Shown here: one piece after another, positions 3,943 to 58,386 of the stretch | How positions within the stretch are numbered: the stretch's first letter is position 1 | Layout: the number at the start of each line of letters is the position of its first letter | NCBI RefSeq assembly: GCF_000150275.1 | Contig: NW_002060962.1 | Span: 1,047,205-1,111,204, forward strand | Source: Trichoplax adhaerens | Lineage: Eukaryota > Animalia > Placozoa | Length of the DNA stretch: 64,000 nt | Direction: 5' to 3' | The notes under the pieces: model-generated | Seen by the model: the letters and a program-made list of their open reading frames with translations, nothing else | What the model was told of the DNA's origin: nothing | Databases searched by the model: none | Position numbers and translations under genes: made by a program

Positions 3943-6578
3943 ATGGTGCAAAACATGCCGCAAACCCAAATTATGGAGCAACCGCCAGAGCCTCATCAGC
4001 AATCGCAAATGCTTGCAAGTCCTTACATTATTAATCAGGGCTATGGCGGATCTGTATCCAGAGTCCTACCGCAAAGCATTCAAATCCGTATCCGCACCGT
4101 AGGCTTATTTATGTTGATTTTGGGTCTACTTTCATTAATTCTAGGTGTTATTGGGTTTTTTCTTGATGGATATACTATCTATGACGATACCCCCTCATTT
4201 TCTATTATTTGTAATGTACGAGCTTACGTGTACCTTGGAACCAACATATGGTGTGGATTTATTGTGAGTATACTGTTGTGTAAAGATCCTGTAAGCCTTA
4301 GCTTAATAATATAGTACGATAATCCTTGGTAGTTCTCTATGATTGAACGAGAATAGATTATTAATTCCTCATACGAATCGATTAATTCGTCTTTTGTGAT
4401 ATTGAGGCAAAAATTTCTTCTCATTGTTCATTCTGACTTGTTAAGATTTGCTAGTATCATCTAAGAATATCGGTATTAGCAATATTCATCTTCATCGTAC
4501 AGATTGATTAGGATTTCCTAAGATATTTTATACGATGGCTAATAATTTATTATCGTTAATAATACTTTCATTTGATTGCAGTATGCTCTCAGTGGAGTAT
4601 TTTCTCTCCTATCCAATCAATTCAGGGATAATGCTCATCTGGTATAGACTACGCTGATGTTATAATAGCTTAAACAGTTTATAACTGAAGAATTTTGCTA
4701 ATTTATTTCGGAAGCTTTCGATCTGATATGGCTTCTAAATGATTACTTTCTATTTGCAGATGAATACTTTTTATGCTTTCAGTATTATCAGTTTTATTAT
4801 GTCTTTGGCTCATTTTGGCTTAAGCTTCGGGCTAATGTTTCATGATGGACAGCATTGTATCTTATGGTATAATGCTGTTTCTATGCTGATATCTATTGGT
4901 AGTTTTGCTCTCTCTCTCGTTGTCATGATTGTACTTGGCCATCAAATATATTGCAGATCTAATCTTCGGGTAAGTTAAACTACTACTTCTGGCTGCTGCA
5001 TGCCATTGCATAGTTCACTCAGGTAAACGATTAGTATTAAGCTTAGCATATAAAACAACTACAATCGCATTCATATTTATGTTTCTGAGAAGTACTGCAT
5101 AGTATCATGTATAATTATGAATGTCTACTTTTTGCTTTGCTCTTTTTCAAGAATAAAGCATGTTGTTAATTGCTAAATCTGGCTAATAGCAAATTAAAAT
5201 CGTTTAATTTTAAACTGCTTTTATATAAATTGGTCTTTAATTACAGAATGCGATTTCAGTTCATTATATGACTGGCCATCAACTTGTTGCTTTCGGCCAA
5301 CCAGGTATTTTGTTAATTCTTTAATGATTACTCTTAATTGGGATATACTGTAATAAGCACTAAAATAGAACTACTTTAATCGTAGTTAGCCTAATTTCGT
5401 TCCAATTCATTTGAGAAATATTCTAACCTATATATTAATTGCCTCAATTATTTACGCTTTTAAATAAATCGGAAGTTTAACTTAACTACGAGCACTTAGC
5501 TTAACTATTATTCTTATTAGCCAGTAAGTTTACCTCAAAATTATTATGCATAAAATTAATATACCGAGATTATTATGTACAGTTACAAGGCAATTGCTAT
5601 TATAATTTAGTCCAAGATGTCAGTATATCTAAGGTAGCCATAATTTACGAAATCAGGCACTTTGCAAAGTTGAGTAACTTAATATTATTACACTACTAAA
5701 TTATTACATCGGTGCACACCGGTATACAGAATAGGAAAATTTGAGCAATTTACAGATTTCAATTCAATTCAAGGATGATTGTTAATATTTTATCATTAAT
5801 ATCATTAAAATTTTCAAATTATTATGGCATAATTATTATGTAAGAAAGAATCACGCAAAATTTATTAATTTAATTAAGATCATTCAGCGATAATAATTTC
5901 TTCTATACAGCGCATTATTATACTACTAGCAGAAAAGAGAGTAAATATAGAACTCTGACTTTTTATGATTGTAGCTACCCTTTAATTCTGTTCTTGAAGA
6001 AATCCAGGAACAAAAATAATTCTCTTCTCGATCGTAATTTAAGATCGATAGACATATTCTTTTTACTTTCTTTACAAACACTATAATAAGTTGTTTAAAA
6101 TTTCACATTAATCAATTTATAGAATACATTTAATTGAGTAATTACCATACTGCATACCAGTTTCTAATCGAGGAATAGTAGTTGCGAATCGCTACAATGA
6201 AATAATGTTTAGTATCAAGAACTAAACTCTTAGCGATTTTAATATTTTCTAGCAGCGATTATACTTAATAAGGCTACTCATATGATTCTCTAAAAGTGCG
6301 CTTAATTAAGATGCTTTAGCCATTACTACATTGCCTTGTAGCATAATTAAATGCCGGTATCATCTTAATTTGCTATGAATGCATTCTTAGTACCAATGGG
6401 AGTCGCTTATTCCGCTGGGCAACCTGTTTATGTCCAAACAACACCTAATCTACAGTATACAACTGAGATGAACCGGGCTGCAATCTTTCCACCACAGCAA
6501 CCGCCACCTCAATATGATCAATTGGTAGCAATAAATCGAAACGATAATTCGAAGGAAACAGAGAATATCATCGGCTAA
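3943..6578 (+). CDS. Array gene 1: MS4A/CD20-like four-TM protein, ~278 aa; exons 3943-4263, 4582-4641, 4760-4969, 5247-5304, 6391-6578
   Basis: Canonical splice sites and an open frame (837 nt). Four hydrophobic segments, IWCGFI|YALSG motif in TM2, PPPQY in the tail. Confidence 0.88.
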
Positions 6579-9500
6579 TTGTCTTGCACTTTGATTGCTA
6601 ATTTTTACTAACTTGATCTAAAAGCTTATGCAATGGATGATAAACAACTCATTAATTTAACCCTGTACATATAGTTTAAGTTAATGTTATAACTAACAGA
6701 CAAATGGATATATACTGAACTTACTCAAACTCACGAAGTACGCCGATTATATTTATTGGACAGTATTCTTCATTTAGTTCTATAATATTAAATTGCCTTT
6801 CTCTCAATGTAAAATCCGTGATATTTTCAACTTAAATTTATTTCTTAGTATGGTTCTTCAATAATGACAGATGATGTTAATCATGTACTTCAAATCGTTA
6901 TGAGACTAAAAATTTTGTTAACACAACTACTCATATTTAGATTTAGACGATCAGTAAGGATGCTAGTGGTAAAATTTTGATAATCTCTAAGGCAGCGTTA
7001 CAGACACAAATACGTGCAATATTATTATTTTTTACTAAGATACGATCACAGTCATTATTGGATTCTAATTACTACTATTTCTCAGTGACTTATGAGATAG
7101 CGTGCACTTTACAAAGTAGTACTCAATAATCTTAAATACGGTAGAGCTTATCATTATTAATACAAATATATCCATGTATCCATAGCGAGATTAACTAACT
7201 TAAATAACTATAATAGTACTGTTGACTAAAAGTTTATGAACAATGTAATCAGTTGTTATCTTTACCACATTTGGAAAGATAGATAAAAATATACGTTGCG
7301 ATGGTGCTAGTAAAAGCCTTTACTATATTAATTATTAGTTAACGTTGGACTGCAAATAAATTTTTACTGAAAGCTATTACTATCCGTTGACGTTCTTAGG
7401 TTTGAATTTTATTACAGCTTTATATTAAATTTTATTAAAAGGTGATATTTAATTCTAGATATATTATAATTTCGAATATCATTACCACAGTTTTTAATCT
7501 GTAACAAGTTGATTAAGGATCAGCGTTACAATTCCGGGGACATTGTTACGATTTGAGGTGGAATCCTCCCGACTTCGCCTCAGATCTACCTTAACCTCTA
7601 ACTATGAGGGTTAATCCAGAAGTACTCACTACCACTTCCTTACTTATATTTAATATTTAATCTCTATTCGCCTTCGTTTACAATTGCAACTACACTTCTT
7701 GCAACTCCGCTGTTGCGTTACATCTGCTATCAACTAAAACTAGACTGAACTAAAACCTGCATATTTGTGTAGTGATAATTCTTTTTAAAGGTATCGATAT
7801 TACTATGTAAGTATGTAGTGTATTTGGATTGTACTGTAACTGTAATCTACTCTTAAATATAGATATTTTATATTGCTATTAAATACAGACACATTTACAG
7901 TCTGTTCGCTCTACATTCAAATATGGCTTACTACATTTAGTTATTACAGTCCTCGCTATTTTCTACTATCATCTGCTATTCTATAACCTGTTTTGGTATA
8001 TGTTGTATCTAATCCTACAATCATGTTCTCTGCATGTGTTCTAACGCCATAGCTATAAATACCACCGTTTTCTACCTTAGATTTCTTAAGTTGCATTATT
8101 AGTCACAGTTAGAATTCACACTTTACTCACGGCAGCTACCACGCTGATCTACCGTAATTATCACATTGTACCTAACTACTATCTACAATATAGTATCCTC
8201 TTTTCTTAAGCTCCTTGTGCAATTCTCTGCATGGCAACTAAAACCACATTATCTTACTCTTCGAACCCTCCATAACAAAGTACAATACTTATAGTAGATT
8301 ATTGCACCTGTACCCTTAAAACGATGACCGAAAGTATTACTTAACATAGATATAAAAAGCAATTGACAACAGTCTTCATTAATCTAACAGGCATCTCAAA
8401 AGTAACCAACGAGGAATAACGACACTGTTAGAAAATTACAGAGATGCGTGACTCGATTCCTATCATAATTTACTGTAGATTGAATGATTGCCTGTTGATA
8501 AATTGAAAGCAACTCCATTTTACTACCTATATTTCAGCAAGTAGAAAAAATATCTTGATGAATAGACATTAGATTAGAACTAGTTACAAGTCTATTTTTT
8601 ATTCTTCTACTCTTAAATTTACTGGAATCATTTTTGAGAAATTTGAAAGAATTTTTTTTCGTTCGGTATCTATAGAGATTTAATTAGACTAAATTCTACT
8701 GAAGTTTATTTGGCGGTTGCATACTAATGTGATCTAATTGCCTATATGCATATGTGATATTATCAAGTCGAATCAATAGTATACAAGTATTATATCGAAA
8801 GGATCAATCCCTATTGGTGGTCTGAATAACTTTTTAAATTGATTAGATAGGCTCCTTTTGAACCAAGAACCAATCATATGATCATCAATTGTATCAATAT
8901 TAATATTTTACTACGCTCAGTTTTAGCTTGATTGGTTCCGCTATAACCCATTGTAGATTTAGCTACATACTAACAAATAAAAGTTAAATTTTAAAGCTTA
9001 CAATTTATCATATCTTTAGTAATGAACTAATACGCTAACAGCTGCGTTACTGTATGTCGTATAGCATCTCAATAGTGTTGACATTAGATGACGCATTTTA
9101 TGTAGATAGAAGTTATACTAGGGTAGCTTGTATTCCCAATTTTGTTAGTGTCGTGCTAATTCATTGTTTCAAGTTTTAATACTTGAAGCCTTATTAGTAT
9201 CGATAATCAACTAATAACATTACATTAATCCTAATCTGTGATATTTTAGATCATTACCGTAACAGTTTTCGGTCAGATCGGAAAAGAAGAAAAATCAATT
9301 TTCAAGGTAGTAGTCAAAAAAACTTGCTTATATTTATTTTATTTTACTAGTGCCTTTATTCCCGTATTTCGAAAATAGGAGAGAATAACAATTTTGTTAT
9401 TCTAATAAAATAGCACTCTTTGATTAATTAAGCATGAACAGAAAATTGTTAAATTTTTCTATAATGTATATGTACTGTATGAAATTTTACATTCTTAATT

Positions 9501-11230: not shown

Positions 11231-14102
11231 ATGACTACCGTAATTAATACGCCAAATTTGCAGACTATTCCAGCTCAGCAACCTCAAATATTGCAGCACC
11301 CACAGGTAATGCAACCGCCACAAATAATCCAACAACAACCACAAGTTATTCATACTCCAATTCAGCAAGGCTGCTGTGGTCCAATGCCAAAAATTATACC
11401 AGATAACTTGCGACCTGCAGTATTTCGAGTGGGCATTTGTGCGTTAGTGAATGGTCTTATATCCACCATTTTTGGTATAGTGGGCTTTTTTACCACCAGT
11501 GTTCGAATTCAAGGCCACCATTATACTTATTATTATTCCAACGTTCTGGCTTATATTGCTCCTGATATTTGGTGCGGAATATTTGTAAGTTGCTATAAAT
11601 TGTTGATGTGATCATTAATTGATAAGGTATTGAATCCAATTAATGACTGCATGACTAAATAATAGTGATTGAAATTACTACTAATCCTATTAATAATTCG
11701 GATCTGCAATTTTCTATACTTGCGCTGTCTAAATTAAGATGCTTGCGACAATCTTATAGTATGCTTTGAATGGACTATTTGCCATATTATCGGATCGTAA
11801 CAGAAGGAATGATCATCTAGTAAGAATTATAACCCATTTTGAACAGATAGTTTAAGATTTAATTTTACTTAGTCACTTCAATCTGAGCTCAATTAAGTAA
11901 AATTACGCAATAATGAAGTTGTATATAGTGAATTCTATACTATATTTGACGGACAATATTAACTTTATAGATAAACAGCTGCTATTCCTTCTCTATTATG
12001 AGCTTCATTTTGTCGCTCTTCCATATTGGTCTCAGCTTTGGCTTTATTTTTCATTACCCATCTCATTTCACAGTTTGGTTCAATATTGTGTCGCTGATAT
12101 TAGCGTTGTGTGGATCGGCTTTCTCCTTAACCCACCTTATAATCCTTAGCCGCAATTTATATTGCAGATCGAATGATTCGGTAAGTGTGAAGGTTGTTAA
12201 TGGTCGTTACTTCTGAGTTAAAATATCGAGAAATAAAATTGTCTAGGTCCGATTAAATTAGCATGCAATTACGCTAAAATATAGCAAATACAAATCTATT
12301 ATTTATAATCCTTGCTTAATCTTGAAGCTAGACCAATCGATAAATATAATTGTGAACTAAGGTTTCGGAAATGTGAAATATGCTGCTAGACAGCTTATTC
12401 GCATTCATCGATGTATAGAATTCCTTTAATTAGTACGGTAAATATCATGCCAAAACATGAACAGTATCTATCTAAAAGGTATAATTTCTTCAGACAGCTT
12501 ATTTGCATTCATCAATGGTCTATATTACTGTAATTAGTACAATATCATATAAAAACATGAACAGCATGCACCTGATTATGGATAATGCCAATAAACTACT
12601 AATAATCCATTCTTAGTCTTGATGCCAGACTGATCGATAAGTGTTTTTGTGAAGTAAGATTTCAGAAATGTACGGTCTCCTACTAGATAGCTTATTAGCA
12701 TTTATTGATGACCTGCAGTATTCCTCTAATTAGTGCAATGTAATGTCAAATATGAACAGCACGCATCTAAAAGATAAGATTTCTTAAGATAGATTATTTA
12801 TATTCATCGATGTGCAATACTCCTCTAATTAGTGCCATAAGTGTCAATGTGAACTAAAATTTTCAGAAATGTACGATAGACCGCTACAGTTTATTCGTTT
12901 TCATCGATGTGCAGCAGTACTCTAGTCGGTATAATATTATATCAAAACATGAACTGCCTGCATCTAAATAGTGTAATTTCTGTTGAGAATACCTATAATA
13001 TTATTCCAACTTCTCCATTCTAAGCTATTTAATTCGATAAATTATAAGTTGTTTTTTATGCAAGATACATCATTATTCAATGTCTATTTTTACTCATTAC
13101 AGAAAATGGTTGCTGTTCAGTATAACGGAAGCAATCAAGTTGTCACTTTTGGACAACAAGGTATTTCCAGCACATTTAATAGCACTTTTAATACAGCCAC
13201 CGGTAATTTATAGCGTAGACTTTCATTTATGATTTAAAGATAGTATACTGATGCAGTCTTGCCTAACAAATTTCCTCGTATAAAAATTATGATAACTTAG
13301 ATTACAGTTATTCAAATTACGATTAAATGATCACTTATAGAGGGTTTAACAGAACTCCACCAGGAAGTTGTTTGATTTTATTCTACTTAAAAGTATTAGC
13401 AGTCGGTCGATATAGAGAGTTTAGAGGAAACAGATTCATATGCAACCATGACTGTTAATGCATTAGATTATTTAAGAAGATAGCCATGATGGAATGGTAT
13501 AATTTGGGTGAACTTTATTAACTACATAATAGTAGATTTAGTTTAGATACCATATACCGTTGTTTTGCAATAATCTCATCAGATCGACAATTGGAGAATG
13601 TTTACTTTATGAATCAAGGTAGTATATATTCAAAGTATTAAACTTACTGAAAAGTTTTCATGCCTTTTATTGATGCACTTTTAATCAAACAATTGCAATA
13701 TCATACCATAAGTCACTACAGTAATCTTATTAATGCCCTTAAATAGAGGAAGCACTTGCTTCATAAACGTAGTTGATACACTGTACTTTAGTTGGGTACT
13801 TTAACTGAAGCATCATGTGCCGGCGAATTTAATCTCTATAATTGCTCTATATACAATACATTCTGTTGCAATTTAATCGTGATTAATATTCTATCACGAA
13901 AGATGGTATACCGCTTCTAATTCAGGATTTAATTTTTGTATTAGCTATCGTCTATCCAACGTCTCAGCCAGTATATTTACAGGCTGCACCCGGGGGACAC
14001 TATACTACAGCTATGAATCCTAATTCAGTAGCACCTACATCAATTCAGCAAGTAGCACCTCCACAATATGGAAATTTACCTCAAACCAAAATATCAAATT
14101 AA
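11231..14102 (+). CDS. Array gene 2: MS4A/CD20-like four-TM protein, ~279 aa; exons 11231-11584, 11760-11819, 11971-12180, 13103-13160, 13945-14102
   Basis: Same exon sizes and phases as gene 1, open frame (840 nt). Q/P-rich N-terminus, GCC, DIWCGIF|YALNG, APPQY. Confidence 0.88.
12345..12980. repeat. Degenerate ~100-bp tandem repeat in intron 3 of gene 2
   Basis: Core like GACAGCTTATTCGCATTCATCGATG recurs near 12389, 12494, 12686, 12788 and 12886, with recurring AAACATGAACAG. Confidence 0.7.
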
Positions 14103-17264: not shown

Positions 17265-20186
17265 ATGTCGGGTTTATCAAGGCAGCAATACGTGCAACAA
17301 CCGCAAATGATGCTGCAACCAGAACAGCAATTACAAGCAGCCCAGCAGCAACCTCAAATTGAATCACAAGTGCAAAGAATTCAACAATATTCAATGGCAC
17401 AACAAGTACAAACAGAGCAACAGCAACCATCATTGGGACAGCAGATGTACATGCAGTCACAATCAATGTCACAATCTTATCCCATACAGCAATCACACAT
17501 ACAAATAACTTATCAGAAACAAGCTGCACAACAAAGTTGCTGCTACTCTTGCTGCTGCAGTAGACCTAGAATTTTGTCGAACCAAATGCATTCCGTCAAC
17601 TTTAAACTTGGTATTTGCATGCTGATTGTTGGCGTAACTTCGCTGGTATTTGGCATTATTGGATTTTTTACCACTTCAGTCTACTACGCAAACGGTCCTT
17701 ATCATTTCTATCATTTCAATGCATTGGTCTACAGTATATAGGTCCAAATATTTGGGCTGCAGTATTTGTAAGTCCTACTTATATAAAATTAGGACTACTA
17801 CTGTTATATCGGTATTTCTTGTATTCTTGGGTGTCCCATCATTAAAGCTATCCGCCACACTTATGTTTTCTAAACTACAAAATGAACTCTTGCATCCAAA
17901 TTATACTTTATAGTTCGATGATCACTCACCTGCTCAATTATTAAGATATTTATTATGGTAATTATTTACTGCCCTTGAGTGAATATCTAATTAAAAATTA
18001 TATAGAATCATGATGAATGATTCTTGCACAAATAGTTACTTCTAGACAAGATTTTTTAATTTAACTAAGTATTATGACCGTCTGACACTAATCATTTAGA
18101 CAATGAGAAAAAAAAATTAATAGGTAATATGTTTCATTAGTAAGATAGCTGAGCTTCTAAGTAGTGCAATATTTAGTCGAACTCGCTTTAATGGCTAATT
18201 AAGATAGCGTAAAGCACATCAATGCTGCTAATCTTTCCATTAGTGAATGTTAAGCGAACAGATGTTTATTTAAATTGCTTAAAACAATTATTAAGATAGC
18301 AGATCGTTTATTGATGTATTCTATATGGCTCTAATAGTAAGAGCTAAATCGGCATTCTTAACGTATCAATGGTTCTATTTACCGAGTAATTATCAAGACT
18401 TTTTAATTGCCTGGAGCATTAACTGAATCTTTAATATATTTATTAGTAAAAAATGCCGATAAATTGCATAACCTCAATGATGAGAAATGATTAATATTAT
18501 ACTTATTCGGTTTTTAAAGAATTGCTATTTATGCAATATTAGATAGGTTTTAAGATAAGTAATCTTCTTATTACAGATTTTTAGAGAGACAAAAATAGAG
18601 GACTAGCTGAGGTTGAATAGTTTTCGTTAGTAAAGTTAGTAATTTTATCAAAGTAAGTTTTAGTTAGGCATAAGTAAATGATTAACTTTTGGCGGCGTTG
18701 TAGTCACAAAGAATGCTAATCATCTTATTAGTACAATTTTCAGCTAGGTACAGCTAAATAATGAATTAATTGGCATTTCTAAAAATTCCTTTTAAAATTA
18801 AATTACAATTTTCCTCAAAACAATAGTTAGTCTTTCATCTTATAAATTCTCCTACAAAATATAAGCATGTACAGTATGTGAGTATCGGATTATATTTTAT
18901 AGTAAGCCATCTTTTTAATAATAAAATGATTAAACTATTCTCATTTGAAATTATCTCAATAATTCATCAAATGCGTAATGTTTTCGTCTAATTTACCTTG
19001 CAGTACATCATCAATGGTGCTCTGGCAACAGCAGCAATTCGAAACAAAACCAACATTCACCTGGTTAGGGATATACCATATTTTGTTATCGCATATACCA
19101 TTTCTATGATTAATTTATTAGTTATAAATATTATTAGTGTATAACTTACCATTTTGCTAGATATGTCTGATTTATAATGATGGCTATTATAATATTGTTA
19201 AAAACAGAAAAGATAAAACCAGTTGCTACTTACTGTAGTTTACTAGATTCATATTAAATCATCATTGCTAAGTGTTTATATACTTGAACGTGACCGATTT
19301 CGCATACGGTCACGTTCATACTCGAGGTAACCAACAAATTTATCTTAGACATCATTAATAGCAGCCAAATAAGGGTGTTAGAAGTGTTTTAAACATTTTT
19401 TCTGACCTAAGTCAAACCTTAACTTATATTTACTGATAATTATCTATCCGCTATAGATGAACAGCTTTTATGCCTTTACGATCATGAGCTTTATCTTTTC
19501 AATGGTTCATCTTGGCTTATGTATCGGTACAATATTTATTTATGGCACTAGATCGTCCTTGTGGTATAATACTGTGTCCATTATATTATCTTTCTTTGCA
19601 CTTTCCATCGCCTTAACTTTCACAATAATTCTGAGCCGATATATCTATTGCAAGAAAAGCAACTCTGTAAGCAAATAACGAAAATGGCAAATTATGCATT
19701 ATAAATGCTCCATTTTATGGACATCTTAAAGTCTGCTTCAGAGGCTTAAATTATTTAGTATTTATATGTGTATTGCAAGTGTACTGCTTGTAAATTCTAG
19801 GTTAAATAGCAATTTCAGGACCACAATAGAATTATAACATGCACTGAGGCATAACCTTCTTTTAAATTTTGACTATTATTCAATTAATAGAATATACCTG
19901 CTGTCCAGTTTTATAATCAGCCGGAAGTTGCTCTACCACCAAGGTTGATGCAAGCAGGTAGATAGTTTCTCTTTGAATTACAAGTTTTATCTGTATAGAT
20001 TAGCAGATATCTTTAACTTTATTAATTTCTATTTACTCAAATTCATTAGGAACGGCCTATCCTTCTCCAGTCTATAGGAAAGACGAACAAATAACGCCGA
20101 CTGCATACAATCCAGGTAATGTAGAAGCCATGTCTAAACCAATTCCACAAGAGCTGCCTCAATACTCTAGTGTTGTAAATCGGTAA
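17265..20186 (+). pseudogene. Array gene 3, frameshifted by a 5-bp insertion at 17730-17734; exons 17265-17767, 19004-19063, 19457-19666, 19891-19957, 20050-20186
   Basis: The ORF stops at 17741. Removing TACAG restores NALVYIGPNIWAAVF and a ~323-aa frame. All other exons and splice sites are intact. Confidence 0.85.
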
Positions 20187-22820
20187 CATAACTGAATGGC
20201 ATAAAAGAAATAAATGATATCATATTTTATCACAAGATTTAAATCATCAACGGTCTTAAGGCTGAATACATTTTTGAGTAACTACCATAGATTACTGGTT
20301 AAGGATCTTAATTTTATGCAACTGAAAATCAAGTAGATCATATAAGCGAATTTCATTTTTTCTTCAATGCTATATACAGTAAATATTTTCTAATTTGAAT
20401 AATTTGTGTAGCGATATATCAAGTATTACTTCTCGGCTATTTAGTTCTAAAAATTAAGTCAGGGTAACTTATAATTTCTACAAGATCAATACGCAATCTT
20501 GTTGATTTAAAATTGTTTTTGCTTGATGCATTTGATCAAATCGAGGATGATACTACACTGCTTTGTATTTTATTTGATAGTATTAATTTTGGAATGGTTT
20601 TAGCTCATACAATATAAACGCTCTTTTAGAATACTTTGATTAATAAAAAATACCATTTTTAAGCTCGAATTGTATAATCTTCTATAACTATATTATGTCA
20701 TGATTGAGTCTGACCTAAACTGGAAAGTAATCATAATCTGCCGACATAGCTGAGACTAAACTGGGATATGTATGACAGTTCTGTTTTACATGGGAACAAA
20801 TTTATAAAAAGAAGTTCGTAGAATGTTCAATTTGGTACAACTATGGTTAGGAAGCTTACCGCTAGTGAACACGGCATCTGCTAAATCCTACTTGAATTTC
20901 TCTACCACCAGAGTAAAAAATAACCAGGAATATCTAAAGCGAAATTTCCTTTATAAGGGGAAAAAGTTCATAATAGGAATTCCGCAGAACTTTCAAAGCG
21001 ACACAACTTATAGTAAGAAAGCTGTACACGAACCTTACATTTGCGTAATTTTGCTGAAATTTTAAATTTTGTCATAGACAGTCATGATACTGATAGCTGA
21101 TTCTTACATAAGCAAATTTACCGAGATACAGTAAATATTGGTACGTACTAAGTTAGCTTCAAATCTCAGCAGTACACCGGTGTCTATTTGTATGTTTACT
21201 TTTACGGTTTGATATTGATTACGAACTGAATTACTTTGAAACAACATAAAACTATATCTAAAACTATGACGGAACTAATTAACTGTTTGTATGTACATTC
21301 AAATCTGTAATTACTATTTTACCATTATGGAAATGCTTATAGTTTTGGAAATTGTTGATGACCAACTACAGTCCGTCGTTAAAGTTAATATTAGCTATTT
21401 CTTTAATAATTACTACTTAAGCTTAGAGCATTACTTATAATTTTCAAAGATTAGACGTTAACAATTTAAACATCATGACTGACAACTAAGAGAACCTAAG
21501 TTTAACCAAGAAGGCAACACTGATAAATAAATAATACGAAAGGAGATTTTCGTTAGTAATGTAGATACAGTTTCTAAATTATAAGTTCACTAAAATTTTA
21601 ACTCATTCTGGTTCACTAAAGTAAAATACAAATTTAAGAGGTACTATTTTTGGATTCGATTGTATAATATGTAGGTAGGCTGGTTTAAGAGCCTATTCTG
21701 CAGACATAACTTAAAAATGATTCATAAATAACGTACAAAAAGCGAAAAAATTTATTAGTGATTGTATAAGGAACACTTTTGTACAATTATAAGTAACTAT
21801 GCTGATATTTTGATTAATTTTGTAAATTTGTCTCAAACATAGTCATTTGATAGCGTACTTATGAATAATTTATAATAGAATGTAGAGGTAAAATAGAAGC
21901 AAATCAAACTATTGGTTGAAGTTTATTCTAAAAGATATTTTTATATTCTCTTATCTGTTCTATATATCTAGGCAAAAATAGTGTTCTTCTATTGCTATAT
22001 CAAACGCAAAATTTAATATGGGTAATGAAATTTTAAAAATATGTTAGCTACTTTAGTAATGTTTGCTATATTTATAATACTGGTCTACATTAAAAAATTC
22101 TCATATTGCCATACATTTTCAGTTGATTCCATAAAACTATTTTACTGAATACAATGAAATTCGTTAAATCTTAAGAATTTAGTTGCCGAGCTACCTACTA
22201 GATAAGAATACTTTTGGATAGGTGAAACCTAATTTGCACCACGATACTCAAGCATATAAGTAGTCCAAAATGCAATTCACAAAGTAAGTTAATATTTACT
22301 TGTTAGATTTCAATGAAATCTTAATACTTTAGCTCTGTATTGATGGAAAATGAAGCAGAAAAAGCTAAAGTAGGAGAATTATATAATTTTATATCTTTTA
22401 ACCTACTTTTACGTATCAATCATCTTTCAATGCAAGGCTAAAATATTTTTAAAATTCATCCTATTATGCATCAATATTAGTATTTTACACGTTAATTACC
22501 TTTAGAGTAGCTCATAAATTGTTTTTTAATTACGCAACTTGTGCTTATATTCTTTCTTTAGTAATACAAAATGCTATCATAACACACAAACTTCACTAGC
22601 TAAAGTTATGGCATTGATCTGGGCTATACTATTTCATATGGTAAATTTTTACATATCCATATTAAGACTTACAAAAAAGACTATACGTTATTAAATATTG
22701 TATACTCACCCAATTTTACCTTGCAATTATAATCACTTATTTTTATAATACTGTACATAGCAATTTCTTTAACTGATTGACTTGCTGAAATCATATAAAT
22801 TTTTTAGATTAGTTACTAAC

Positions 22821-23633
22821 CACTGCTATAACTTTATAATAATCTTCTCTTCTTAAAAGTATGACGAAAGCTATACTGAATGTAAAGGCAGATAATGCTA
22901 TGCTCAATGATATAAGTTTGTACCAATAGATAGCTCGAGTATATCAGTAAAGCATGAAGCCAGAACTGAGACCAATATGTACACCAGAGAGAATTAAGCT
23001 AAGCATGGATGAAATTGAAAAGTAATTCATCTATTGAAAATAGCAAGAAAAAATGTTTAAGAATCGGTAAGGTAGGACAACGTAAAAGACTGTTATATTT
23101 TATATACTGTAGTGGTATCGACATCACACGAACGTACTATTCATACACTATTTTACTGCTCACAAGACACAGTTGCAAAGATGCCCCAAACTGCATACTG
23201 CAATGAAATATAAATGAAGACAAATATTGTAATTGATCATAGGCTTCGTATAATAGCTTAAGGAAAATCCACGCAGGAATAAGTAAAAAACATGCTCAAT
23301 AAAATGGAAACGGAAATATATTTTGGGTATGGAATAAGATATAATTGAAAAAAATTCCTTTCAGGAAAATAGTTTTAACATCCAACGAGTAGTGAAAATT
23401 CCAATGATCCCAAATCCTACACTCGCAACGCCAGTCAGACATAATACGATACCAAGTCTTAACTGAGCGGCATGAAGATGCAAGGGCAAAGATTTCTCGC
23501 ATGGTATACAACAATTTTCATTAATAGCTTCGTCGTGATTAATTATTTGAGGCGTCTGACCTGGTAACATTTTAGTAAGAGTTTTCGTTTCTTGTGCATC
23601 TTGGACATATTTCACTAGGACAGGAGTAGCCAT
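22821..23633 (-). pseudogene. Array gene 4, pseudogene; remnant exons 23633-~23385, 23197-23138, 23030-22821
   Basis: Exon 1 loses homology after GIFTT and lacks the IWxG segment. Exon 2 reads YAVWGIFATVSCEQ*NSV*I. Exon 3 has an in-frame TGA. Confidence 0.85.
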
Positions 23634-23709
23634 CCTGCTTTGAAATACTTTAATTTTATTGTTAGCTCTACAAGGGTAAATCAAACATAGGTTCCTCATT
23701 ATATCTTGG

Positions 23710-25680: not shown

Positions 25681-25684
25681 GCTA

Positions 25685-33942: not shown

Positions 33943-34504
33943 TGTGATATATACCGATCACGAAATTCCAAATTTTAGAAAAATAAGAGCTTTATGGAAT
34001 CTTATACAAAGATTTACAACACACAACTCTACTCTAGCCGAATACTACTACTAAAGACTTCTATAACGAACTAACAGAATAATCTAAAGTTGCATGCTTT
34101 TATACTTTTCGTAGCATTCGCAGCTACAATCCGTACGCCAACCTTTTACCTTATTTTACGCGTAGTTAAATTATTCTCAGTAACACTATTCTACTATGGA
34201 CCATCATTAATCCGATTTGGATATGACTGCAGTATTTACGTAGGCATTATTCACACCAGTCAAAGTATAATGAATTAACCATATCCTAATATATGATTTA
34301 CAGTTCCATTTTTACCTATAACCTTATGAGTAACTCAACACCTTACTGTATATAGTCATCTGTACTCTAGCATAGAGTCTATAACACTACAGTCTATAGT
34401 TATGGCTACCAAATATATCTTAGAATAAATATAGAAGTTACCTTACCGTACATTATACTAAACATGGCTAACAGTCTACAATCACTATACTAAGTTACAT
34501 TACA
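33943..34504 (-). mobile_element. Solo LTR, family C (562 bp), inserted in the last coding exon of gene 6
   Basis: Exact TSD ATGGT. The flanks rejoin to ...QPGPYTVALN, homologous to gene 5 QPGPYTAVPN. Confidence 0.92.
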
Positions 34505-38017: not shown

Positions 38018-40097
38018 TTAGGCATCACCACTCGCAGTTTTTACTGGTTCTGGCTGAATAGTAGCAGTTTGAGTTTGAGTAGGGGCTACAGTATACCCCC
38101 CAACAGGCGCAACTTGCGTGTACGTTGGTTGAGCGGGTTGGTATTGCATTATGACTTGATCATTAATATGAAAACAAGAAAATTAGTATTTGCTACACTA
38201 ATTATTCTATTTAAATTATCTGTGCATAATCTTACGCAAACTACCATACTTAAACTATTTAACTTAACCTTAAGAGATATCATAAACACACGAAAAATAT
38301 CACACTTAATGCTACTGAAATGAGATAATTCATAAATGCATGGATGGAAGAGGTAAAATCTTTCCATAAATAGAAAAGGCAAACTCTTTCCCTAATAGCA
38401 TAGTATCCTCTGACAACACATGAATATTACAATTGATTTGATTTTCTTTACAAAATGATCATAGTATCAATTAGAGGATAGTCAGGAATAGCCTACAGAT
38501 CACAATTTGTGATCATATTTAACATGAAATTATTATTACCTGGTTGGTTAGGATATTGTTGGTTAGGGTATTGTTGGTTAGGATATTGCTGCACAGTTAG
38601 AACTTGACTTTTACCTTGAAATTGGACTGTGTAAGCACCCTAAAATTGAGGCCATGATATCAATATATCTATTTATGATTACTCAACAAATTCATATACA
38701 TATTTTAATCTATAAATCAGTAATAAATGCGAGCCAAAAATGGCTATTTAATAAGTGAAATTAAAGCATGAACATAGAAAGCTTGATATGTACAGTATCA
38801 TATGCAGTCTTATAAAGGATTAATTTTTTAACGAAGAGCAAGAACTGAAGAAATTTATTATTTTGAGATAAAATTTTCATATTTTATAAGATACTGAAAT
38901 TGTTTCACTAACCGGTGGGGTAGGTTTACAATAAATTTCTTTACTTAAAAGTATGATGAAAGTCAAACTGCAAGAAAAGCCAATTAATGCAAAAATCATT
39001 GAAACAATGTTGAACCATTCCGTGTAACGAGCGCCGTAGTTAAACATAAAGCCAAGGCTTAAGCCAAAGTGAGGTAATGATAATATAAAGCTCATTATCG
39101 AGAAAGCATAGAAGGTGTTCATCTATTAAAAATTACAACAGCCAGATAAAATGAAGTAATTAGTTGTAACGATCTTTCCAGTCGTTAAGGTAATTATAAG
39201 TAGGTAATTAGAATTTAATTGTTACAGTTTGGAATGTTTTACGCGCATTGTATTTGATAATCAGAATTACCTGATGAACGTCGTTTTGTTTCTTGTAAGT
39301 AACAGCGGCTAAGATTCCACATATGAAATACTGCAGCAAAAAGATTTCGAAACTTGAGTTAAAATTTATCTTATTTCGATGTTATGATACATTTTCAAAA
39401 TGTGACAACAATACTAAGGCATATATTAGATAAATGGTCATTGTATTATAGTATTCAGGGTATTCATTTATGACCGTAGACAGTTAAATTACTTAAACTA
39501 CAGTAGTTAAATTATACAAAACCTGGAAAACAGAATGATAGTGAAATAGTGTATCAGAGAATTGAAAACCTTGTATTACATCTACTGCAGTAACAATGAT
39601 AGTAATTGATTATACTGGTATTTATATTTGTCAAGACTCCCTTACGTTATGGAAGTACTAGATAGGAAACGAAAGCTCGTCAATATTAGAAATAGAAAGA
39701 ATTGCTCATTACTGTCAAACATATTTTCAGTAACAACTTTATCAATGCTTACAAATAATCCTCCCCAAATATCTCCGGCGTACCAACTGGTTGGATTATA
39801 ATAGGTATAATAAGTATGAGAATGGAACGAGTAGCCTCTATAATTGGCCTTGAAAATTCCAACGGTACCGAATATCACACTGGCTAGACCAGACAGGCTC
39901 AAGAAGATGCCAAGTCCTAATTGGGTGGAGCGAAATTTAATCGGTAAAAATTTACCATGTGGTCTGCACATACCGGTACCAGAAGGAGCCTTATTTTGTT
40001 TGTGTATTATTTGTGGCTGCTGGACAGGAATCATTTGTGCTGGCTGTTGAATTACTAGCGGTTGTTGGACGTATTGTGGTTGAGCAGGAGTAGCCAT
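38018..40097 (-). CDS. Array gene 7: MS4A/CD20-like four-TM protein, ~283 aa; exons 40097-39753, 39330-39271, 39122-38913, 38639-38540, 38154-38018
   Basis: Canonical splice sites, open frame (852 nt), DIWGGLF|YFICG, (QYPNQ)x3 in exon 4. Confidence 0.88.
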
Positions 40098-45471: not shown

Positions 45472-46917
45472 TTAATATCGAGCAGGATCACCTTGGAACT
45501 TGATTGCATATGGGGTCTATAACACATTAGTAAAAATTAAGAATAGAAACTTTATTTATAACCTATTCTATGAATACTTCAGTAATGTAATTCGTATAGT
45601 CTTTATGGCAACGACATCTGGCTATTTTCTACTACCGTACATTTTATTGCTTTTGCTATAACTACAAGTTATTGTACTAAGCATTTAGGAATAGAGCTGC
45701 AATGACTATTGGTCAACATTATGTTAATTTGGCATAAAGTACAATCTAAAAGCAGCATGTCTTAAATTATTAAATTCGAATTATGTGACTAACTTGTGGC
45801 CCAGAAATGCAGAAAATATTTTTTAGTAAAAATCTTATAAAAACGGCGGAAATAAGGAATCCAATCCCTGCCAAAACTAAGGAGGCGATATTGAACCACA
45901 TACTCAGTGCGACTCCATATACAAACATGAAACCAAAGCTCACACCAATATGTAAAACTGACATGGATAGGCTTATAATCGTGAATGCATAATAGCTATT
46001 CAGCTGTCCATTTGGAAAAGAAGGGATGCCACATATGTCAGTTTTATATTCATTTTAATTTAAATTTTTCGACAATTTATCTTATATTAATCTGTAGTAA
46101 CAATCTAATTCAATTCAGTTTTATTACTCCTAATTTACCAAATGAAAATTTTTTCGCGCATTCTGATGTTCTACTATAGCAAAGATACCACAAACAATAT
46201 ACTTTAATAAGAAATCAAAAAATGAACACAATCCACGTTAGTATTGCCTGTAGAGGGTATATAAATCAAGGAAAAATGGCAGGACCATGCTTATAAAACG
46301 CATTAATTAATTAAACTCAGTGCATCTCTTTCCATAAGTTAAAATCATAAAATTTGATTGTAATCCTGAAGATAATATTGTTTACTTTATTGCTGCTTCT
46401 AGTTAAGTTATTCATATATAACAATATTAAAAATGCTATCGTCCTTTACCTACTCATATTAATAACTCTAAAAATCTGTAATTTTTATTCTTTATCAACC
46501 CAACTTGGGCGTTATTATACACTAAATTATTAAAAAATGAATTTATTATACCAAAATAAAAATAAATCATTAAGAAATACATGATACAGGCATTCTTTAC
46601 GGCTAAAAATTACTATAAAGTTATTGACTTACGAAAAACCCTGCCCAAATGTCTGCGCCTACCCATGTTGTGGGATTATGGTAAACATAGCCTTGCAAAT
46701 GAGAGTCAGGTACAGTTGTGGTAAAAATTCCAACGATGCCTAAGACCATGCTAGCTAGACCACATATCATTAAAACGATTGCAAGTCCAAATTGTGCTGG
46801 ACGGAAATTAGAAGGTAATGATTTCCCATGTGGAATACAATATCCTGGATTCTCAGCGGGCAGATAAGAAATAACTTGAGGCATTTGGCTTTGCTTCGAT
46901 ACTACTGGAAGAGACAT
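45472..46917 (-). CDS. Array gene 8: four-TM paralog with shortened tail (~200 aa); exons 46917-46633, 46201-46139, 46003-45794, 45516-45472
   Basis: TM exons are intact. Exon 4 is 65 nt to its donor at 45451 versus 70 nt in gene 5, giving an early TAA at 45474-45472. Confidence 0.72.
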
Positions 46918-52844: not shown

Positions 52845-53846
52845 AGTACTTAGTCAATATTATAACAAAGCTGTAAAGTTTGCAAACAGTTAGGACCTTC
52901 AGCTATAATACAAAACGAGCCTTTCGATACTGTCACAAAGAAATAAAAGCTGTACAGTGTCGGTGAAGAAAACTTCATAAAAGAAATGACAATTTTTAGG
53001 TAATTAATATATCATCGTGCTTTGAGATCTTGCAATCAGTACTACTTTCCGGAGAGATCTAATAGTAAAATCTGTACGTGGTCATTATAGCGAAATGGAT
53101 GCCAAATTGCACTGCTGATAATACCAGGCTGATTATACTTAAAGCGTAGAAACGATTGACCTAAAATTGGAAAAGTTTAAAAGTGCGTACAAGTGTTATA
53201 GCAGATTTTATATTGATCATAATAAATATAACTTTTCGGGCAGGTCTAGAGTCATTATAGGCCCAAGTATGCAACTAAAGATATAATAAAAATCAAACTA
53301 TCCATACCATTAGCTGGTTAATTTCATTATACCGTAGTATAACAGCAAAGATTCCACCAAAGATATACTGAGGAAGAATGCAAGAATATCAGTAGATCAC
53401 CTAGCATTTCATCAATTAGAATAGAATAAATTCTGTATTTGTAATGAAAAACGATACTATAGATATCTAGGATTTGAAAGTACCACAATTTTATAATGAT
53501 AAATTACATGGTACTGAAAAAATAGCCATATGGTTAACTGAAACTTGTACTATTACGTTAAATAGGCCTTATCAAGAAAATCCATAGATTAATATCTACT
53601 TACAAACAAGGTAATCCATAAATCGATCGATATTAATGTGGCAGGGGTTCTGTTAAATAAAACAATAGAGAAAACAAGACATCCAAGCAGGCAAAAGACA
53701 GACAAAATTATCATCAAAATGGTAATCTTTGATCTTGGGCAAATTCGCTTAGGTATAGATCGTTTGGGCATGCAAGATGGATAAGCAAATCGGCGAAGTT
53801 TCTTTAACTGCTTATCACTAAGTTCTTGGTCAAGTTCCGTAGGCAT
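52845..53846 (-). pseudogene. Array gene 9: divergent paralog, probably a pseudogene; exons 53846-53604, 53367-53308, 53160-(stop 53059)
   Basis: Same splice pattern (DLWITLF|YIFGG...|VNRFYALS). TAG follows TM3. A TM4-like remnant SFVIILTKYF lies near 52880-52845. Confidence 0.68.
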
Positions 53847-56170: not shown

Positions 56171-58386
56171 CTAAACAAGCTGGGGTGGATTAGCAGACAC
56201 TGGTTGAGGATACATCATAAATTGTCCATTTTGAGATGGTTGTGCATAAATACTTGCAGCAGGTGGATCAATATTTTCTGTCGGAAAAAATTAAAATTTT
56301 TGATTAGAGCGATTGCTCATACTTATTTTCAGAGGATCACTGATTATATAGTGTCAATTTTAAAATAAGTAAGAAACTTAATTCTGTTAGAACATAATAT
56401 CATTCGAAAAGCAGAATCTTAGTAATTTACGTTCACGACTTTGAACTTTCTAACAGTGATTATATTTGATATTGCAGTAATTAGCACTATAATATAGAAT
56501 AGTTCTTAAGTATTGCAAATGAAATTGTTGTAGTAATTAGACGAAAGCGATTTTATGTAGACTTTATTCAGGCATTCATTACGGTCGAGTACCAATAGTA
56601 GTGGTGAAGGAACTTGATAGACCGTAGCTAGGTTAAATTAAGATAAGTTTTCTTGAACGATTGACCAAAGTTTTTAAACTACAAACAACTGGATTAGATA
56701 CTTACCAGGTTATCATTACATTGCAAAGTGATTCTAATGACTTTTACAACCTCATCAACTGCAAAACTTTTCTTGCTTTAAGCAGGAATTGAATAAATTT
56801 TAAAGTCATAGATAAAATGCTCTATTACAGTAATAATTATAATAGCTGCAGAGTACATCCAACTTGAATTTTCAGCCTTCAAAATATTTAAGAAATGCGC
56901 ATACAATCTGTAAAGATATCGTTGCACAGGTACAGTATATCGCTACCTTAGTAGTGCAATATTCATAAAACTAGGAAATATTTTACCTGTTTGAATAGGA
57001 TACGGTTGGAATATTACCGTTTGATTTTGTATGTTCCCCTAAACCATTAGCAATTACAACAGTTTGTTACATATTTTATATGGTACTTTATGAAAGTCTA
57101 ATAAAATTCACAAGAACTGTCGAATTTGGTGATCGTTAACGTTTATTAAAGTCAATTTTATAATAGTGGCATAGATAATGAGTTGCAGCTAGCTTTATGA
57201 TTTATAATACTAATGCGATATTATGGCATACGCAAATGGCAACTGAAGGACATTGATTATCTTGCGGTAATACTACCAGGATGCGTGTAAACTGCATAAT
57301 ATTTATCTTGATAGAAGGTGATGAGCACATAATACAAAATAAACTATAATATTTTTTACTTACACTTTCAGCAGGTCGGCAGTAGATTGTACGTGAAAGG
57401 ATAATCATCATGGCTAAGGCTAAGGAAAAAACAACAACTCCTAAAAACATCGAGGCGATGTTATGCCAATACAAATAATGAGCACTGTGGGCAAACATAG
57501 ATGCCAATGAAATTCCAAATTGGAGTATGGAGAAAAATAAGCTGATTATTACAAAGGCATAGTAAGAGTTCATCTGTAATAAATTCAAACGTTATTAGTT
57601 ATTCAAGGCCCATATAGTATTCTATTAATAAGGCACTTTTAAAAGCTAATTATGGCGAGGGTATCTATATTAAAAGTCGCATTACTTAAAAGTATGTAAC
57701 GCCATATCAGACTTGAATATATCAATCAATTGCATATATCTTACCAAATGGTGATTGTCTTTATGAAAATGAATAGTAGCTGCAAAAATTCCACAAATGC
57801 AATACTAAAGAAATTAAATATTCTTCATGAATATCATTTAATGTTAGGCCAGTTGTAAATGGACCTGTTATTTTTGTCTGCTGATATCTTGACGGTTCAC
57901 CGATTACAGTACGATATTCATTGCACTACACGGTCGGTATACGAATTATTATTTATGAAATATGAATCAATACGGAAATACTGCCAAGATTTAAAAGTAT
58001 CAAATTATAGAATGCTAAAGTTTATTCATCAAGAATCAATAATATCAAAAATTTACTATTCATAAGTATATTTTAGTTTCTATAATCTCAATAGAATCAA
58101 GATAATTAGCAACAGAATTCATATTTAACCGAAAATTAAGTCATCTTACCGAAATCCCAACCCATATATCTAATGCTATGACAACAGAAGGGTTGTAGCA
58201 ATACCCATGGAAGCCGTATCCAATGCCACCTAAGATGATACTGACAAAGCCAATAACTGAAATGGTGATGCCGATTCCTAAAGATGTAGGACGCAAGTGC
58301 AATGGCAATAGGAAGTTGTTGTAATATCTTTGATAACTAAATGATTCTGGCTGGTACGGATGGTGCCCACTAATTTCAGCAGACAT
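56171..58386 (-). CDS. Array gene 10: short MS4A/CD20-like four-TM protein, ~221 aa; exons 58386-58150, 57804-57745, 57573-57364, 57038-56987, 56277-56171
   Basis: Canonical splice sites, open frame (666 nt), DIWVGIS|YCICG. Confidence 0.85.

What the first reader, a model, noticed from the sequence alone, without database searches (positions are those of the whole stretch)
4160..58230. Hypervariable Tyr/His/Ser-rich TM1-TM2 loop on a constant scaffold
Loops: g1 DGYTIYDDTPSFSIICNVRAY; g2 TSVRIQGHHYTYYYSNVL; g3 TSVYYANGPYHFYHFNAL; g5 TYTVHTYSGNGYNYTYLIYNPT; g6 NSYLYTYQGISYNSTYYIYNMT; g7 ANYRGYSFHSHTYYTYYNPT; g8 TTVPDSHLQGYVYHNPT; g9 NRTPAT; g10 FHGYCYNPS. Length and sequence vary widely while exon 3 stays at 210 nt in the intact copies. 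The Tyr-rich, central-Gly, hairpin-like composition recalls antibody CDR-H3 binding surfaces. Inference: a diversified extracellular ligand-recognition loop (microbial, food, self/non-self or metal cues).
Basis: partly seen in the sequence, partly recalled or inferred. Interest (0 to 1): 0.85.

Follow-up and report, generated by a model that had tools for sequence, protein, structure and literature searches.

The report
Tyrosine-rich loop in placozoan CD20-like genes
A tandem cluster of Trichoplax genes for small four-helix membrane proteins of the CD20/MS4A type has an enlarged, tyrosine-rich outer loop that differs between gene copies. The loop changes no faster than the other non-membrane parts, so a receptor role remains a guess.

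Summary
The window is Trichoplax adhaerens DNA. It holds ten tandem five-exon genes for about 260-280-residue four-helix membrane proteins.

**Family.** They are diverged CD20-like (MS4A/sarcospan, Pfam PF04103) proteins. The Pfam match sits at threshold, and the best fold matches are FceRI-beta, sarcospan and CD20.

**Observation.** The quoted loops are all present. They lie between helix 1 and helix 2 and are most likely extracellular. They hold 21% Tyr against 4% in the scaffold and 6.5% expected from base composition.

**What does not hold.**
- The scaffold is only 47-55% identical between copies.
- The second outer loop and both tails are as variable as this loop.
- The loop keeps a conserved end motif (Y-x-Y-N-P-T).
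- Thr is enriched; Ser is not.
- The loop is identical between strains H1 and H2 in four of five genes.
- Paralogue dS is saturated, so diversifying selection is not shown.

**Origin of the long loop.** The 19-30-residue loop is confined to one tandem clade. Eleven other paralogues, g10 among them, have 7-17 residues, most of them 10.

**State of the copies.** g3, g4 and g9 are broken. g6 and g7 are transcribed and spliced as modelled.

**Earlier scan findings.** The scan had already noted other CD20-like genes (triple fusions) elsewhere in this genome.

**Verdict.** This is a new variant of a known kind. The binding function is inferred, not tested.

The parts
3943..6579 (+). g1 (TRIADDRAFT_61177, protein P0004, 278 aa). 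Exons 3943-4263, 4582-4641, 4760-4969, 5247-5304, 6391-6579. Outer loop 1 at 4162-4230.
   Evidence: Read from the sequence. The exon pieces agree with the deposited protein P0004. Pfam CD20 scores 28.3 bits against a cut-off of 27.9.
11231..12180 (+). g2 exons 1-3: 11231-11584, 11760-11819, 11971-12180. Loop 1 at 11492-11551. A C-terminal exon with a PPxY motif lies near 13887-14099.
17265..19666 (+). g3 exons 1-3: exon 1 from 17265, exon 2 19004-19063, exon 3 19457-19666. Loop 1 at 17670-17729. A 5-nt insertion at about 17731-17735 shifts the frame just after the loop.
   Evidence: The H2 orthologue P0031 reads straight through this place.
22812..23699 (-). g4, a pseudogene. The loop and the start of helix 2 are lost from exon 1, and the remnants of exons 2 and 3 contain stops.
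28297..29380 (-). g5 exons 1-3: 29054-29380, 28648-28713 (66 nt), 28297-28506. Loop 1 at 29087-29158.
34456..36124 (-). g6. Exon 1 35780-36124, exon 2 35314-35373, exon 3 from 35173 down to 34997, where the window lacks about 395 nt. The last exon ends its intron at 34567. Loop 1 at 35813-35884.
   Evidence: RNA joints 35373>35780 and 35173>35314. RNA and DNA contigs carry extra letters at 34997. H2 protein P0003.
37556..40097 (-). g7 (TRIADDRAFT_61181). Exons 39753-40097, 39271-39330, 38913-39122, 38540-38638, and a last exon from 38154 down. Loop 1 at 39786-39851.
   Evidence: All four introns appear as GT..AG joints in RNA contigs of two organisms. Proteins P0002 and P0028.
45794..46917 (-). 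g8 exons 1-3: 46633-46917, 46139-46201 (63 nt), 45794-46003. Loop 1 at 46666-46722.
53062..53846 (-). g9, a degenerate copy. Exon 1 53604-53846 lacks the G..S...G..G helix-1 motif, exon 2 is 53308-53367, and exon 3 (53062-53160) has a stop after 33 codons. Its 6-residue loop is at 53637-53654.
57364..58386 (-). g10 exons 1-3: 58150-58386, 57745-57804, 57364-57573. A short (10-residue) loop 1 at 58183-58212. It groups with the short-loop paralogues.

Best explanation
**What it is.** The window holds part of a placozoan-specific, tandemly duplicated, birth-and-death family of CD20-like (MS4A/sarcospan superfamily) four-helix membrane proteins. At least 33 copies exist in the genome.

**Topology.** The N and C tails face the cytoplasm. 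They are Q/P-rich, with juxtamembrane Cys residues, and a PPxY motif in one branch. The helix 1-2 and helix 3-4 loops face outward, and both are rich in Tyr (about 20%).

**Origin of the long loop.** In one clade of about twelve neighbouring genes (C1395 about 1,025-1,094 kb; g1-g8 here) the first outer loop grew from about 10 to 19-30 residues. It grew by gaining a Tyr/Thr-rich stretch in front of a conserved end motif (Y-x-Y-N-P-T).

**Predicted shape.** The alternating Y-x-Y pattern, frequent central Gly and a medium-confidence model point to a short two-stranded hairpin standing on the outer face, next to the second Tyr-rich loop.

**Evolution.** Selection keeps the loop's composition and end motif. 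The rest of the loop has diverged between old paralogues at the rate of the other non-membrane parts.

**Inferred function.** The two loops together form a paralogue-specific extracellular contact surface for a ligand or a partner protein. This follows the precedent of MS4A proteins, which act as chemoreceptors or receptor subunits.

**Shown:** gene structure, family, expression of g6 and g7, composition, clade restriction.
**Inferred:** topology, hairpin, binding.
For: - **Identity.** P0004 is XP_002117090 of T. adhaerens. Only 23 proteins among 1.84 billion representatives match the exon-3 profile. Those looked up by name are Trichoplax proteins, apart from one weak hit to a coral protein and several unnamed records.
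- **Family, by sequence.** Pfam CD20 is the top match for 13 of 15 family proteins, with E 2e-6 and 28.3 bits (cut-off 27.9) for four of them. In the ESM Atlas, 25 of 30 nearest clusters carry PF04103. A profile search of PDB sequences ranks FceRI-beta and CD20 first, though weakly, at E 0.06-0.5.
- **Family, by fold.**
  - The model has four confident helices.
  - Foldseek's top three hits are FceRI-beta.
  - VIA-align gives FceRI-beta Z 16.8 (rmsd 2.4 over 139 residues), sarcospan Z 15.8 and 15.5, and CD20 Z 10.8.
- **Topology.** The positive-inside counts fit N and C termini in the cytoplasm.
- **Composition.** Loop 1 has Tyr 21% and Thr 15%, with K, E and D near zero. Loop 2 has Tyr 19%, against 1.4% in the cytoplasmic loop.
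- **Clade restriction.** Loop 1 is 7-17 residues in eleven paralogues and 19-30 in nine intact neighbouring genes, plus 20 in g3. On an exon-3 tree the long-loop genes sit on one side of a branch with support 86/90.
- **Hairpin.** Strands 87-90 and 95-98 are predicted in P0028.
- **Expression.** Every intron of g7 and two of g6 appear as GT..AG joints in RNA contigs of two organisms.
Against: - No binding partner or ligand is known, and no cell type is known.
- The Pfam match is at threshold and fails for g6 and g7 (about 20 bits).
- Helical bundles reach Z about 13-14 by chance, so the fold match alone is weak.
- The hairpin has pLDDT about 64. In g1 the loop is modelled without structure, with pLDDT below 50 for residues 80-89.
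- Tyr is also common at membrane interfaces, so part of the enrichment could be structural rather than for binding.
- Three or four of the ten copies are broken, so individual copies are dispensable.
Confidence: 0.55

Rival explanations
1. The loop is a hypervariable, CDR-like recognition element kept diverse by diversifying selection, as in immune or chemosensory receptor repertoires.
For: - The family is a tandem array with pseudogenes, the birth-and-death pattern typical of receptor repertoires.
- Loop length and sequence differ between copies.
- In g7, three of the seven amino-acid differences between H1 and H2 fall in the 22-residue loop.
- Against run X1 the g7 loop has three nucleotide changes, all replacing an amino acid, in 66 nt. 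The whole 5.85-kb stretch differs at about 0.65%.
- Mammalian MS4A1 is reported to be a chemoreceptor (PMC11026480).
Against: - The loop is identical between H1 and H2 in g3, g6 and two upstream genes.
- Pooled over the four pairs, the loop has 3 differences in 96 residues against about 11 in 691 elsewhere, which is not significant.
- In the closest paralogue pairs (g5/g6, g5/g7) loop dN is 0.29-0.38 and scaffold dN 0.38-0.39, with dS at or above 1.
- Loop 2 and the tails are as variable as loop 1.
- The loop's end motif is conserved.
Confidence: 0.15
2. The loop is a loosely constrained linker. Tyr and Thr accumulate because they sit well at the membrane-water interface and in beta structure, and because the genome is AT-rich. 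The loop binds nothing specific, and the protein works through its helices, for example as a scaffold or chaperone subunit like FceRI-beta or sarcospan.
For: - The loop is as variable as the other non-membrane parts.
- Tyr is also high in the short loops (12%) and in loop 2 (19%) across the whole family.
- The closest solved relatives, FceRI-beta and sarcospan, are accessory subunits of larger complexes (their roles are from established knowledge).
Against: - Neutral codon expectation gives only 6.5% Tyr, and gives 6.5% Lys and 12% Leu, both of which are nearly absent from the loop.
- The enlarged loop has been kept at 19-30 residues in about ten genes that are saturated at silent sites.
- The loop is unchanged between strains in four of five genes.
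- All of this points to constraint, not a free linker.
Confidence: 0.22
3. The loop length variation comes from replication slippage of short Tyr-codon repeats, that is, a mutational origin and not a selected one.
For: The g7 loop has a 9-nt unit (Thr-Tyr-Tyr) repeated in tandem with one mismatch. Its best near-tandem repeat is 12 nt, reached by 2.1% of codon shuffles.
Against: Over all ten loops the repeat score is not above codon-shuffled controls (sum 71 against 66.9, P 0.17). Most loops show no tandem unit.
Confidence: 0.08

Closest known systems
MS4A family: FceRI-beta (MS4A2) and CD20 (MS4A1); Pfam CD20-like PF04103
   Same: - Size of about 250-280 residues, with four helices and both tails on one side.
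- Tandem gene clusters.
- Pfam PF04103 is the top match.
- The best fold matches are 8k7t_B at Z 16.8 and 8y81_B at Foldseek rank 1; CD20 gives Z 10.8.
   Different: - Sequence similarity is marginal, at the Pfam cut-off.
- An earlier phylogenetic study found no clear MS4A genes in invertebrates (PMC2826416).
- Here the long outer loop is loop 1 (19-30 residues) and loop 2 is short (5-13). In CD20 it is loop 2 that is long and carries the antibody epitope (established knowledge).
- Only g1 has a Cys in each outer loop. The other copies have no Cys pair across the loops, so they cannot form a loop disulfide.
Sarcospan (dystrophin-glycoprotein complex), a PF04103 member
   Same: The four-helix bundle matches at Z 15.8 (8yt8_S) and 15.5 (9c3c_n), equal within error to the MS4A2 match.
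   Different: Sarcospan is a single-copy scaffold subunit. It has no tandem repertoire and no Tyr-rich enlarged loop 1 (established knowledge, not tested here).
MS4A chemoreceptors of mammalian olfactory neurons
   Same: A tandem family of tetraspans with variable outer loops. MS4A1 responds to small ligands with calcium entry in HEK293 cells (PMC11026480).
   Different: - No functional data exist for the placozoan genes.
- Positive selection on outer loops is reported for mammalian MS4A genes (my recollection of Greer et al. 2016, not checked here) but is not shown here.
Tyr-rich antibody CDR-H3 and minimal Tyr/Ser synthetic binders
   Same: A composition dominated by Tyr with small polar residues and Gly, on a hairpin-like loop.
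   Different: - This is a resemblance of composition only.
- There is no somatic or germline diversification mechanism, no immunoglobulin fold, and Ser is not enriched.
- The loops are conserved between strains.
Triple CD20-like 12-helix genes found earlier by this scan in the same genome
   Same: The same superfamily, in the same organism.
   Different: Those are three-unit fusions on other DNA. The genes here are single four-helix units with an enlarged loop 1. I did not compare them.

Membership tests
CD20-like family (Pfam PF04103: MS4A, TMEM176, sarcospan) | Match to the Pfam model at or above the gathering score | tested here: inconclusive
   - 28.2-28.3 bits against a cut-off of 27.9 for P0004 (g1), P0006, P0011 and P0013.
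- 17-25 bits for g3, g6 and g7 orthologues and others.
- PF04103 is the top family for 13 of 15 proteins.
CD20-like family (Pfam PF04103: MS4A, TMEM176, sarcospan) | Four transmembrane helices with N and C termini in the cytoplasm | tested here: met
   - Four helices have block-mean pLDDT mostly 80-94, lower at the helix ends.
- K+R density is 0.11-0.15 on the proposed inner segments and 0.05-0.06 on the outer loops.
- This is a prediction only; there is no experimental topology.
CD20-like family (Pfam PF04103: MS4A, TMEM176, sarcospan) | Helix-bundle fold like solved members | tested here: met
   - The top three of 48,161 chains are FceRI-beta and sarcospan (Z 16.8, 15.8, 15.5), and CD20 gives Z 10.8.
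- Foldseek's top three hits are FceRI-beta.
- Caveat: helical bundles score high by chance.
MS4A proper (vertebrate clade) | Long second outer loop (CD20-type) and orthology to vertebrate MS4A genes | tested here: not met
   - Loop 2 is 5-13 residues, and loop 1 is the enlarged one.
- The exon-3 profile search found no vertebrate protein.
- I file the genes at superfamily level only.
   - Paralogue dS is saturated, and loop dN is about equal to scaffold dN in the closest pairs.
- H1 against H2: no loop change in four genes and three changes in g7.
- The g7 loop differs about nine times more than the stretch as a whole (0.65%), based on three nucleotide changes.
   At least 33 exon-3 copies lie in four genomic clusters. 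g3, g4 and g9 are broken.

The most novel reading that the evidence does not exclude
The long-loop clade is a placozoan recognition or chemosensory repertoire built on the MS4A-type fold. A Tyr-rich hairpin in outer loop 1, together with Tyr-rich loop 2, serves as the binding surface. MS4A-type ligand sensing would then predate nerve cells and would use a different loop from the mammalian receptors.
Probability: 0.12. Interest if true: 0.75.

Novelty: new variant of a known kind. Interest (0 to 1): 0.42.

Why it matters
Whether invertebrates have true MS4A/CD20 relatives has been disputed (PMC2826416). Predicted folds now tie a placozoan-only expansion of at least 33 genes to FceRI-beta, sarcospan and CD20.

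One clade has remodelled the outer face by enlarging loop 1 into a Tyr/Thr-rich probable hairpin. This arrangement is not described for known family members.

If these proteins sense ligands or partners, they would give a handle on how a nerveless animal reads its surroundings. They would also bear on the ancestral role of the MS4A fold.

As it stands, this is an uncharacterised lineage-specific gene family with an interesting loop, not a demonstrated receptor system.

Tried and rejected
- **Pfam on single exons** gave nothing. The family only shows on full-length deposited proteins.
- **No joined models were searched.** Exons were searched one by one by reference, and full-length work used proteins returned by the databases (P0004, P0028 and others). 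For g2, g5, g8 and g10 there is therefore no full-length search or fold.
- **The search for homologous proteins.**
  - With the family alignment it hit the candidate cap and returned three proteins.
  - With g1 it returned only g1 itself, so no H2 orthologue of g1 was found in the length range.
H2 DNA could not be fetched, so strain comparisons are at protein level, plus one read-laying run.
- **Pairwise dN/dS between paralogues.** pS is 0.56-0.85, which is saturated, so the result is not usable as a test of selection.
- **Slippage origin of the loops.** Not significant overall (P 0.17).
- **PPxY as a family-wide tail motif.** It is present only in g1, g2 and three upstream genes, and absent in g5-g8 and g10.
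- **Literature.** No paper links Trichoplax with MS4A/CD20-like genes or names these gene ids.
- **Tree.** It was built from exon 3 alone (70 columns). Most forks are unsupported, and a single origin of the long loop is compatible with it but not proven.
Full report
**Source and gene content**

The window is 30% G+C eukaryotic DNA. It equals contig C1395:1047205-1111204 of a 105.6-Mb, 1414-contig genome. An exact protein look-up identifies the genome as Trichoplax adhaerens (Placozoa): g1 is XP_002117090 / TRIADDRAFT_61177.

Open frames and self-comparison show ten tandem copies of one gene. g1-g3 lie on the + strand and g4-g10 on the - strand. Each copy has the same exon plan:
- Exon 1 holds a Q/P-rich N tail, helix 1, the loop in question and the first half of helix 2.
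- Exon 2 (60-66 nt) holds the rest of helix 2 and a basic inner loop.
- Exon 3 (210 nt) holds helix 3, a short second loop and helix 4.
- Two further exons encode a Q/P-rich tail.

The g1 model read from the sequence agrees piece by piece with the deposited protein P0004.

Full-length analyses used proteins that the databases returned.

**Check of the observation**

All quoted loops are present at the stated places.

I defined the loop as the stretch between the end of the G..S...G..G helix-1 motif and four residues before the D/N-I-W-x-G motif of helix 2. Its length is then 19-24 residues in g1-g3 and g5-g8, 10 in g10 and 6 in g9.

Composition of the nine intact long loops (202 residues):

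| Residue | Loop | Scaffold | Expected from base composition |
|---|---|---|---|
| Tyr | 21.3% | 4.2% | 6.5% |
| Thr | 15.3% | 3.9% | 5.9% |
| His | 5.9% | 3.0% | 3.0% |
| Asn | 7.9% | 4.8% | 6.5% |
| Ser | 9.4% | 9.5% | 8.7% |
| Lys, Glu | about 0.5% each | 1.5%, 0.5% | 6.5%, 2.9% |
| Asp | 2.0% | 1.1% | 2.9% |

The Tyr excess is significant against the neutral expectation (P 4e-12) and against the scaffold (P 2e-14).

The 'constant scaffold' part is overstated. Mean pairwise identity per segment:

| Segment | Identity |
|---|---|
| Helix 1 | 0.47 |
| Start of helix 2 | 0.51 |
| Helix 3 | 0.55 |
| Helix 4 | 0.49 |
| Loop 1 | 0.21 |
| Loop 2 | 0.14 |
| N tail | 0.25 |
| After helix 4 | 0.25 |

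Loop 1 is therefore ordinary among the non-membrane parts. It also keeps a conserved end motif, Y-x-Y-(x)-N-P/M-T. An Asn four residues before helix 2 is kept even in most short-loop paralogues.

**State of the copies**
- g4 is a pseudogene. The loop is deleted and exons 2 and 3 carry stops.
- g9 is degenerate, with a stop in exon 3.
- g3 has a 5-nt insertion right after the loop. The strain-H2 orthologue P0031 lacks it. This agrees with the other first-stage note on that site.
- g6 looks truncated in the window. DNA contigs of two organisms carry about 395 nt at 34997 that the window lacks, and an RNA contig carries the missing coding letters. The lesion is therefore specific to the reference sequence, either an assembly gap or a private deletion.
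- RNA contigs of two organisms show every g7 intron and two g6 introns as GT..AG joints at exactly the modelled boundaries. These two genes are therefore transcribed.

**What the family is**

An exon-3 profile found only 23 proteins among 1.84 billion representatives. Those whose names I looked up are Trichoplax adhaerens or Trichoplax sp. H2 proteins, apart from one weak hit to a coral protein and several unnamed records.

The genome holds at least 33 exon-3 copies in four clusters.

Evidence for the CD20-like superfamily:
- **Pfam.** On full-length proteins PF04103 is the top family for 13 of 15. Four of them score 28.2-28.3 bits against a cut-off of 27.9.
- **Predicted structure.** AlphaFold2 gives four confident helices.
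- **Foldseek.** The top three hits are FceRI-beta, which is MS4A2.
- **VIA-align.** An all-against-representatives search puts FceRI-beta (Z 16.8, rmsd 2.4 over 139 residues) and sarcospan (Z 15.8, 15.5) on top, with CD20 at Z 10.8.
- **PDB sequence profile.** FceRI-beta and CD20 rank first, weakly.
- **ESM Atlas.** 25 of the 30 nearest clusters carry PF04103, from echinoderms and cnidarians.

Each line is weak alone, and helical bundles score high by chance. They all point the same way. I file the genes in the CD20-like superfamily, not in vertebrate MS4A proper.

**Topology**

K+R density is 0.150 in the N flank, 0.130 in the helix 2-3 loop and 0.112 in the C flank. It is 0.053 in loop 1 and 0.059 in loop 2. 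This fits termini inside and loops 1 and 2 outside, as in the solved relatives.

Tyr is 19% in loop 2 as well, against 1.4% in the inner loop. The whole outer face is therefore Tyr-rich.

**Where the long loop came from**

Across 21 genes with a readable exon 1, loop 1 has 7-10 residues in ten paralogues (g10 among them) and 17 in one. It has 19-30 residues only in nine adjacent intact genes at C1395 about 1,025-1,094 kb, plus g3.

On an exon-3 tree the long-loop genes lie on one side of a branch with support 86/90, together with one long-branch stray. A single origin is not excluded, and the label is clustered (0 of 500 shuffles reach it).

The model of the g7 orthologue gives strands at 87-90 and 95-98 with a four-residue turn, at pLDDT about 64. 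The atypical g1 loop is unmodelled.

**Is it hypervariable?**
- **Paralogues.** Silent sites are saturated (pS 0.56-0.85). In the closest pairs loop dN (0.29-0.38) equals scaffold dN (0.38-0.39). In older pairs it is 1.5-3 times higher.
- **Strains H1 and H2.** The loop is identical in g3, g6 and two upstream genes. In g7 it has three replacements out of seven in the whole protein.
- **Run X1.** The g7 loop has three nucleotide changes, all replacing an amino acid, in 66 nt. The 5.85-kb stretch as a whole differs at about 0.65%. This is a hint for one gene only.
- **Pooled.** The excess is not significant.
- **Slippage.** It does not explain loop growth (P 0.17).

**Conclusion**

It is best described as a clade-specific loop expansion in a placozoan CD20-like family, maintained by selection on composition. 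It is not a CDR-like hypervariable element.

A paralogue-specific extracellular contact surface is the most likely role, but this is inferred. Mammalian MS4A1 acting as a chemoreceptor (PMC11026480) is the precedent. An earlier study denied MS4A relatives in invertebrates (PMC2826416), and no paper treats these genes.

The scan had already recorded other CD20-like genes (triple fusions) elsewhere in this genome.

Noticed in passing
window 17730-17736: g3 carries a 5-nt insertion (a TA-CAG-TA context) that shifts the frame right after the loop. The Trichoplax sp. H2 orthologue P0031 reads through uninterrupted, so the lesion is specific to the reference strain or assembly.
   Followed up: partly
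window 34997: DNA contigs of two organisms (runs X1, X3) hold about 395 extra letters here, and an RNA contig holds about 100. In the window these letters (the end of g6 exon 3, intron 3 and exon 4; 34 codons) are missing. This is either a reference assembly gap or a private deletion.
   Followed up: partly
window 37833: A 5-nt 'TACAG' insertion relative to the window appears in an RNA contig of run X15, downstream in g7. It is the same kind of short footprint as in g3.
   Followed up: no
window 1423-1877, 33943-34445, 51426-51958: Three copies (90-95% alike, one inverted) of a roughly 500-nt element lie between the genes. Contig word depth at 34300-34495 is about 1000 times the flanking depth, so this is a high-copy dispersed repeat.
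   Followed up: no
window 16237-16467 and 49360-49590; 23861-24229 and 26123-26481: A further inverted repeat pair (231 nt, 95%) and a direct repeat pair (about 370 nt, 84-92%, 2.25 kb apart) lie next to the g4 pseudogene.
   Followed up: no
window 61712-62275 (-): A 187-codon open frame for a different multi-helix membrane protein. It gives only a weak Pfam EI24/CysZ hit (E 0.023) and is not part of the family.
   Followed up: partly
L002/L003 (C1395:904766 and 912286): Two nearly identical short-loop paralogues lie 7.5 kb apart. The deposited model TRIADDRAFT_61155 (P0001, 450 aa) contains the helix 2-4 and tail block twice, which may mean that it fuses tandem copies.
   Followed up: no
C-terminal exons of g1 (about 6500) and g2 (about 14060), and three upstream genes (L006-L008): A PPxY/LPxY motif lies 10-20 residues before the stop in g1, g2 and three upstream genes. 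It is absent in g5-g8 and g10. It could mean Nedd4-type regulation of one branch only.
   Followed up: partly
L017 (contig C770, 2.5 kb): A small separate contig carries an exon 3 that matches the g8 type about as well as g8 itself. It is probably an unplaced allelic copy.
   Followed up: no
exon 1 and exon 3 of most copies: A Cys-Cys pair lies about 15 residues before helix 1, and an invariant Tyr-Cys lies just after helix 4. Both are on the proposed cytoplasmic side and are candidate lipid-attachment sites.
   Followed up: no
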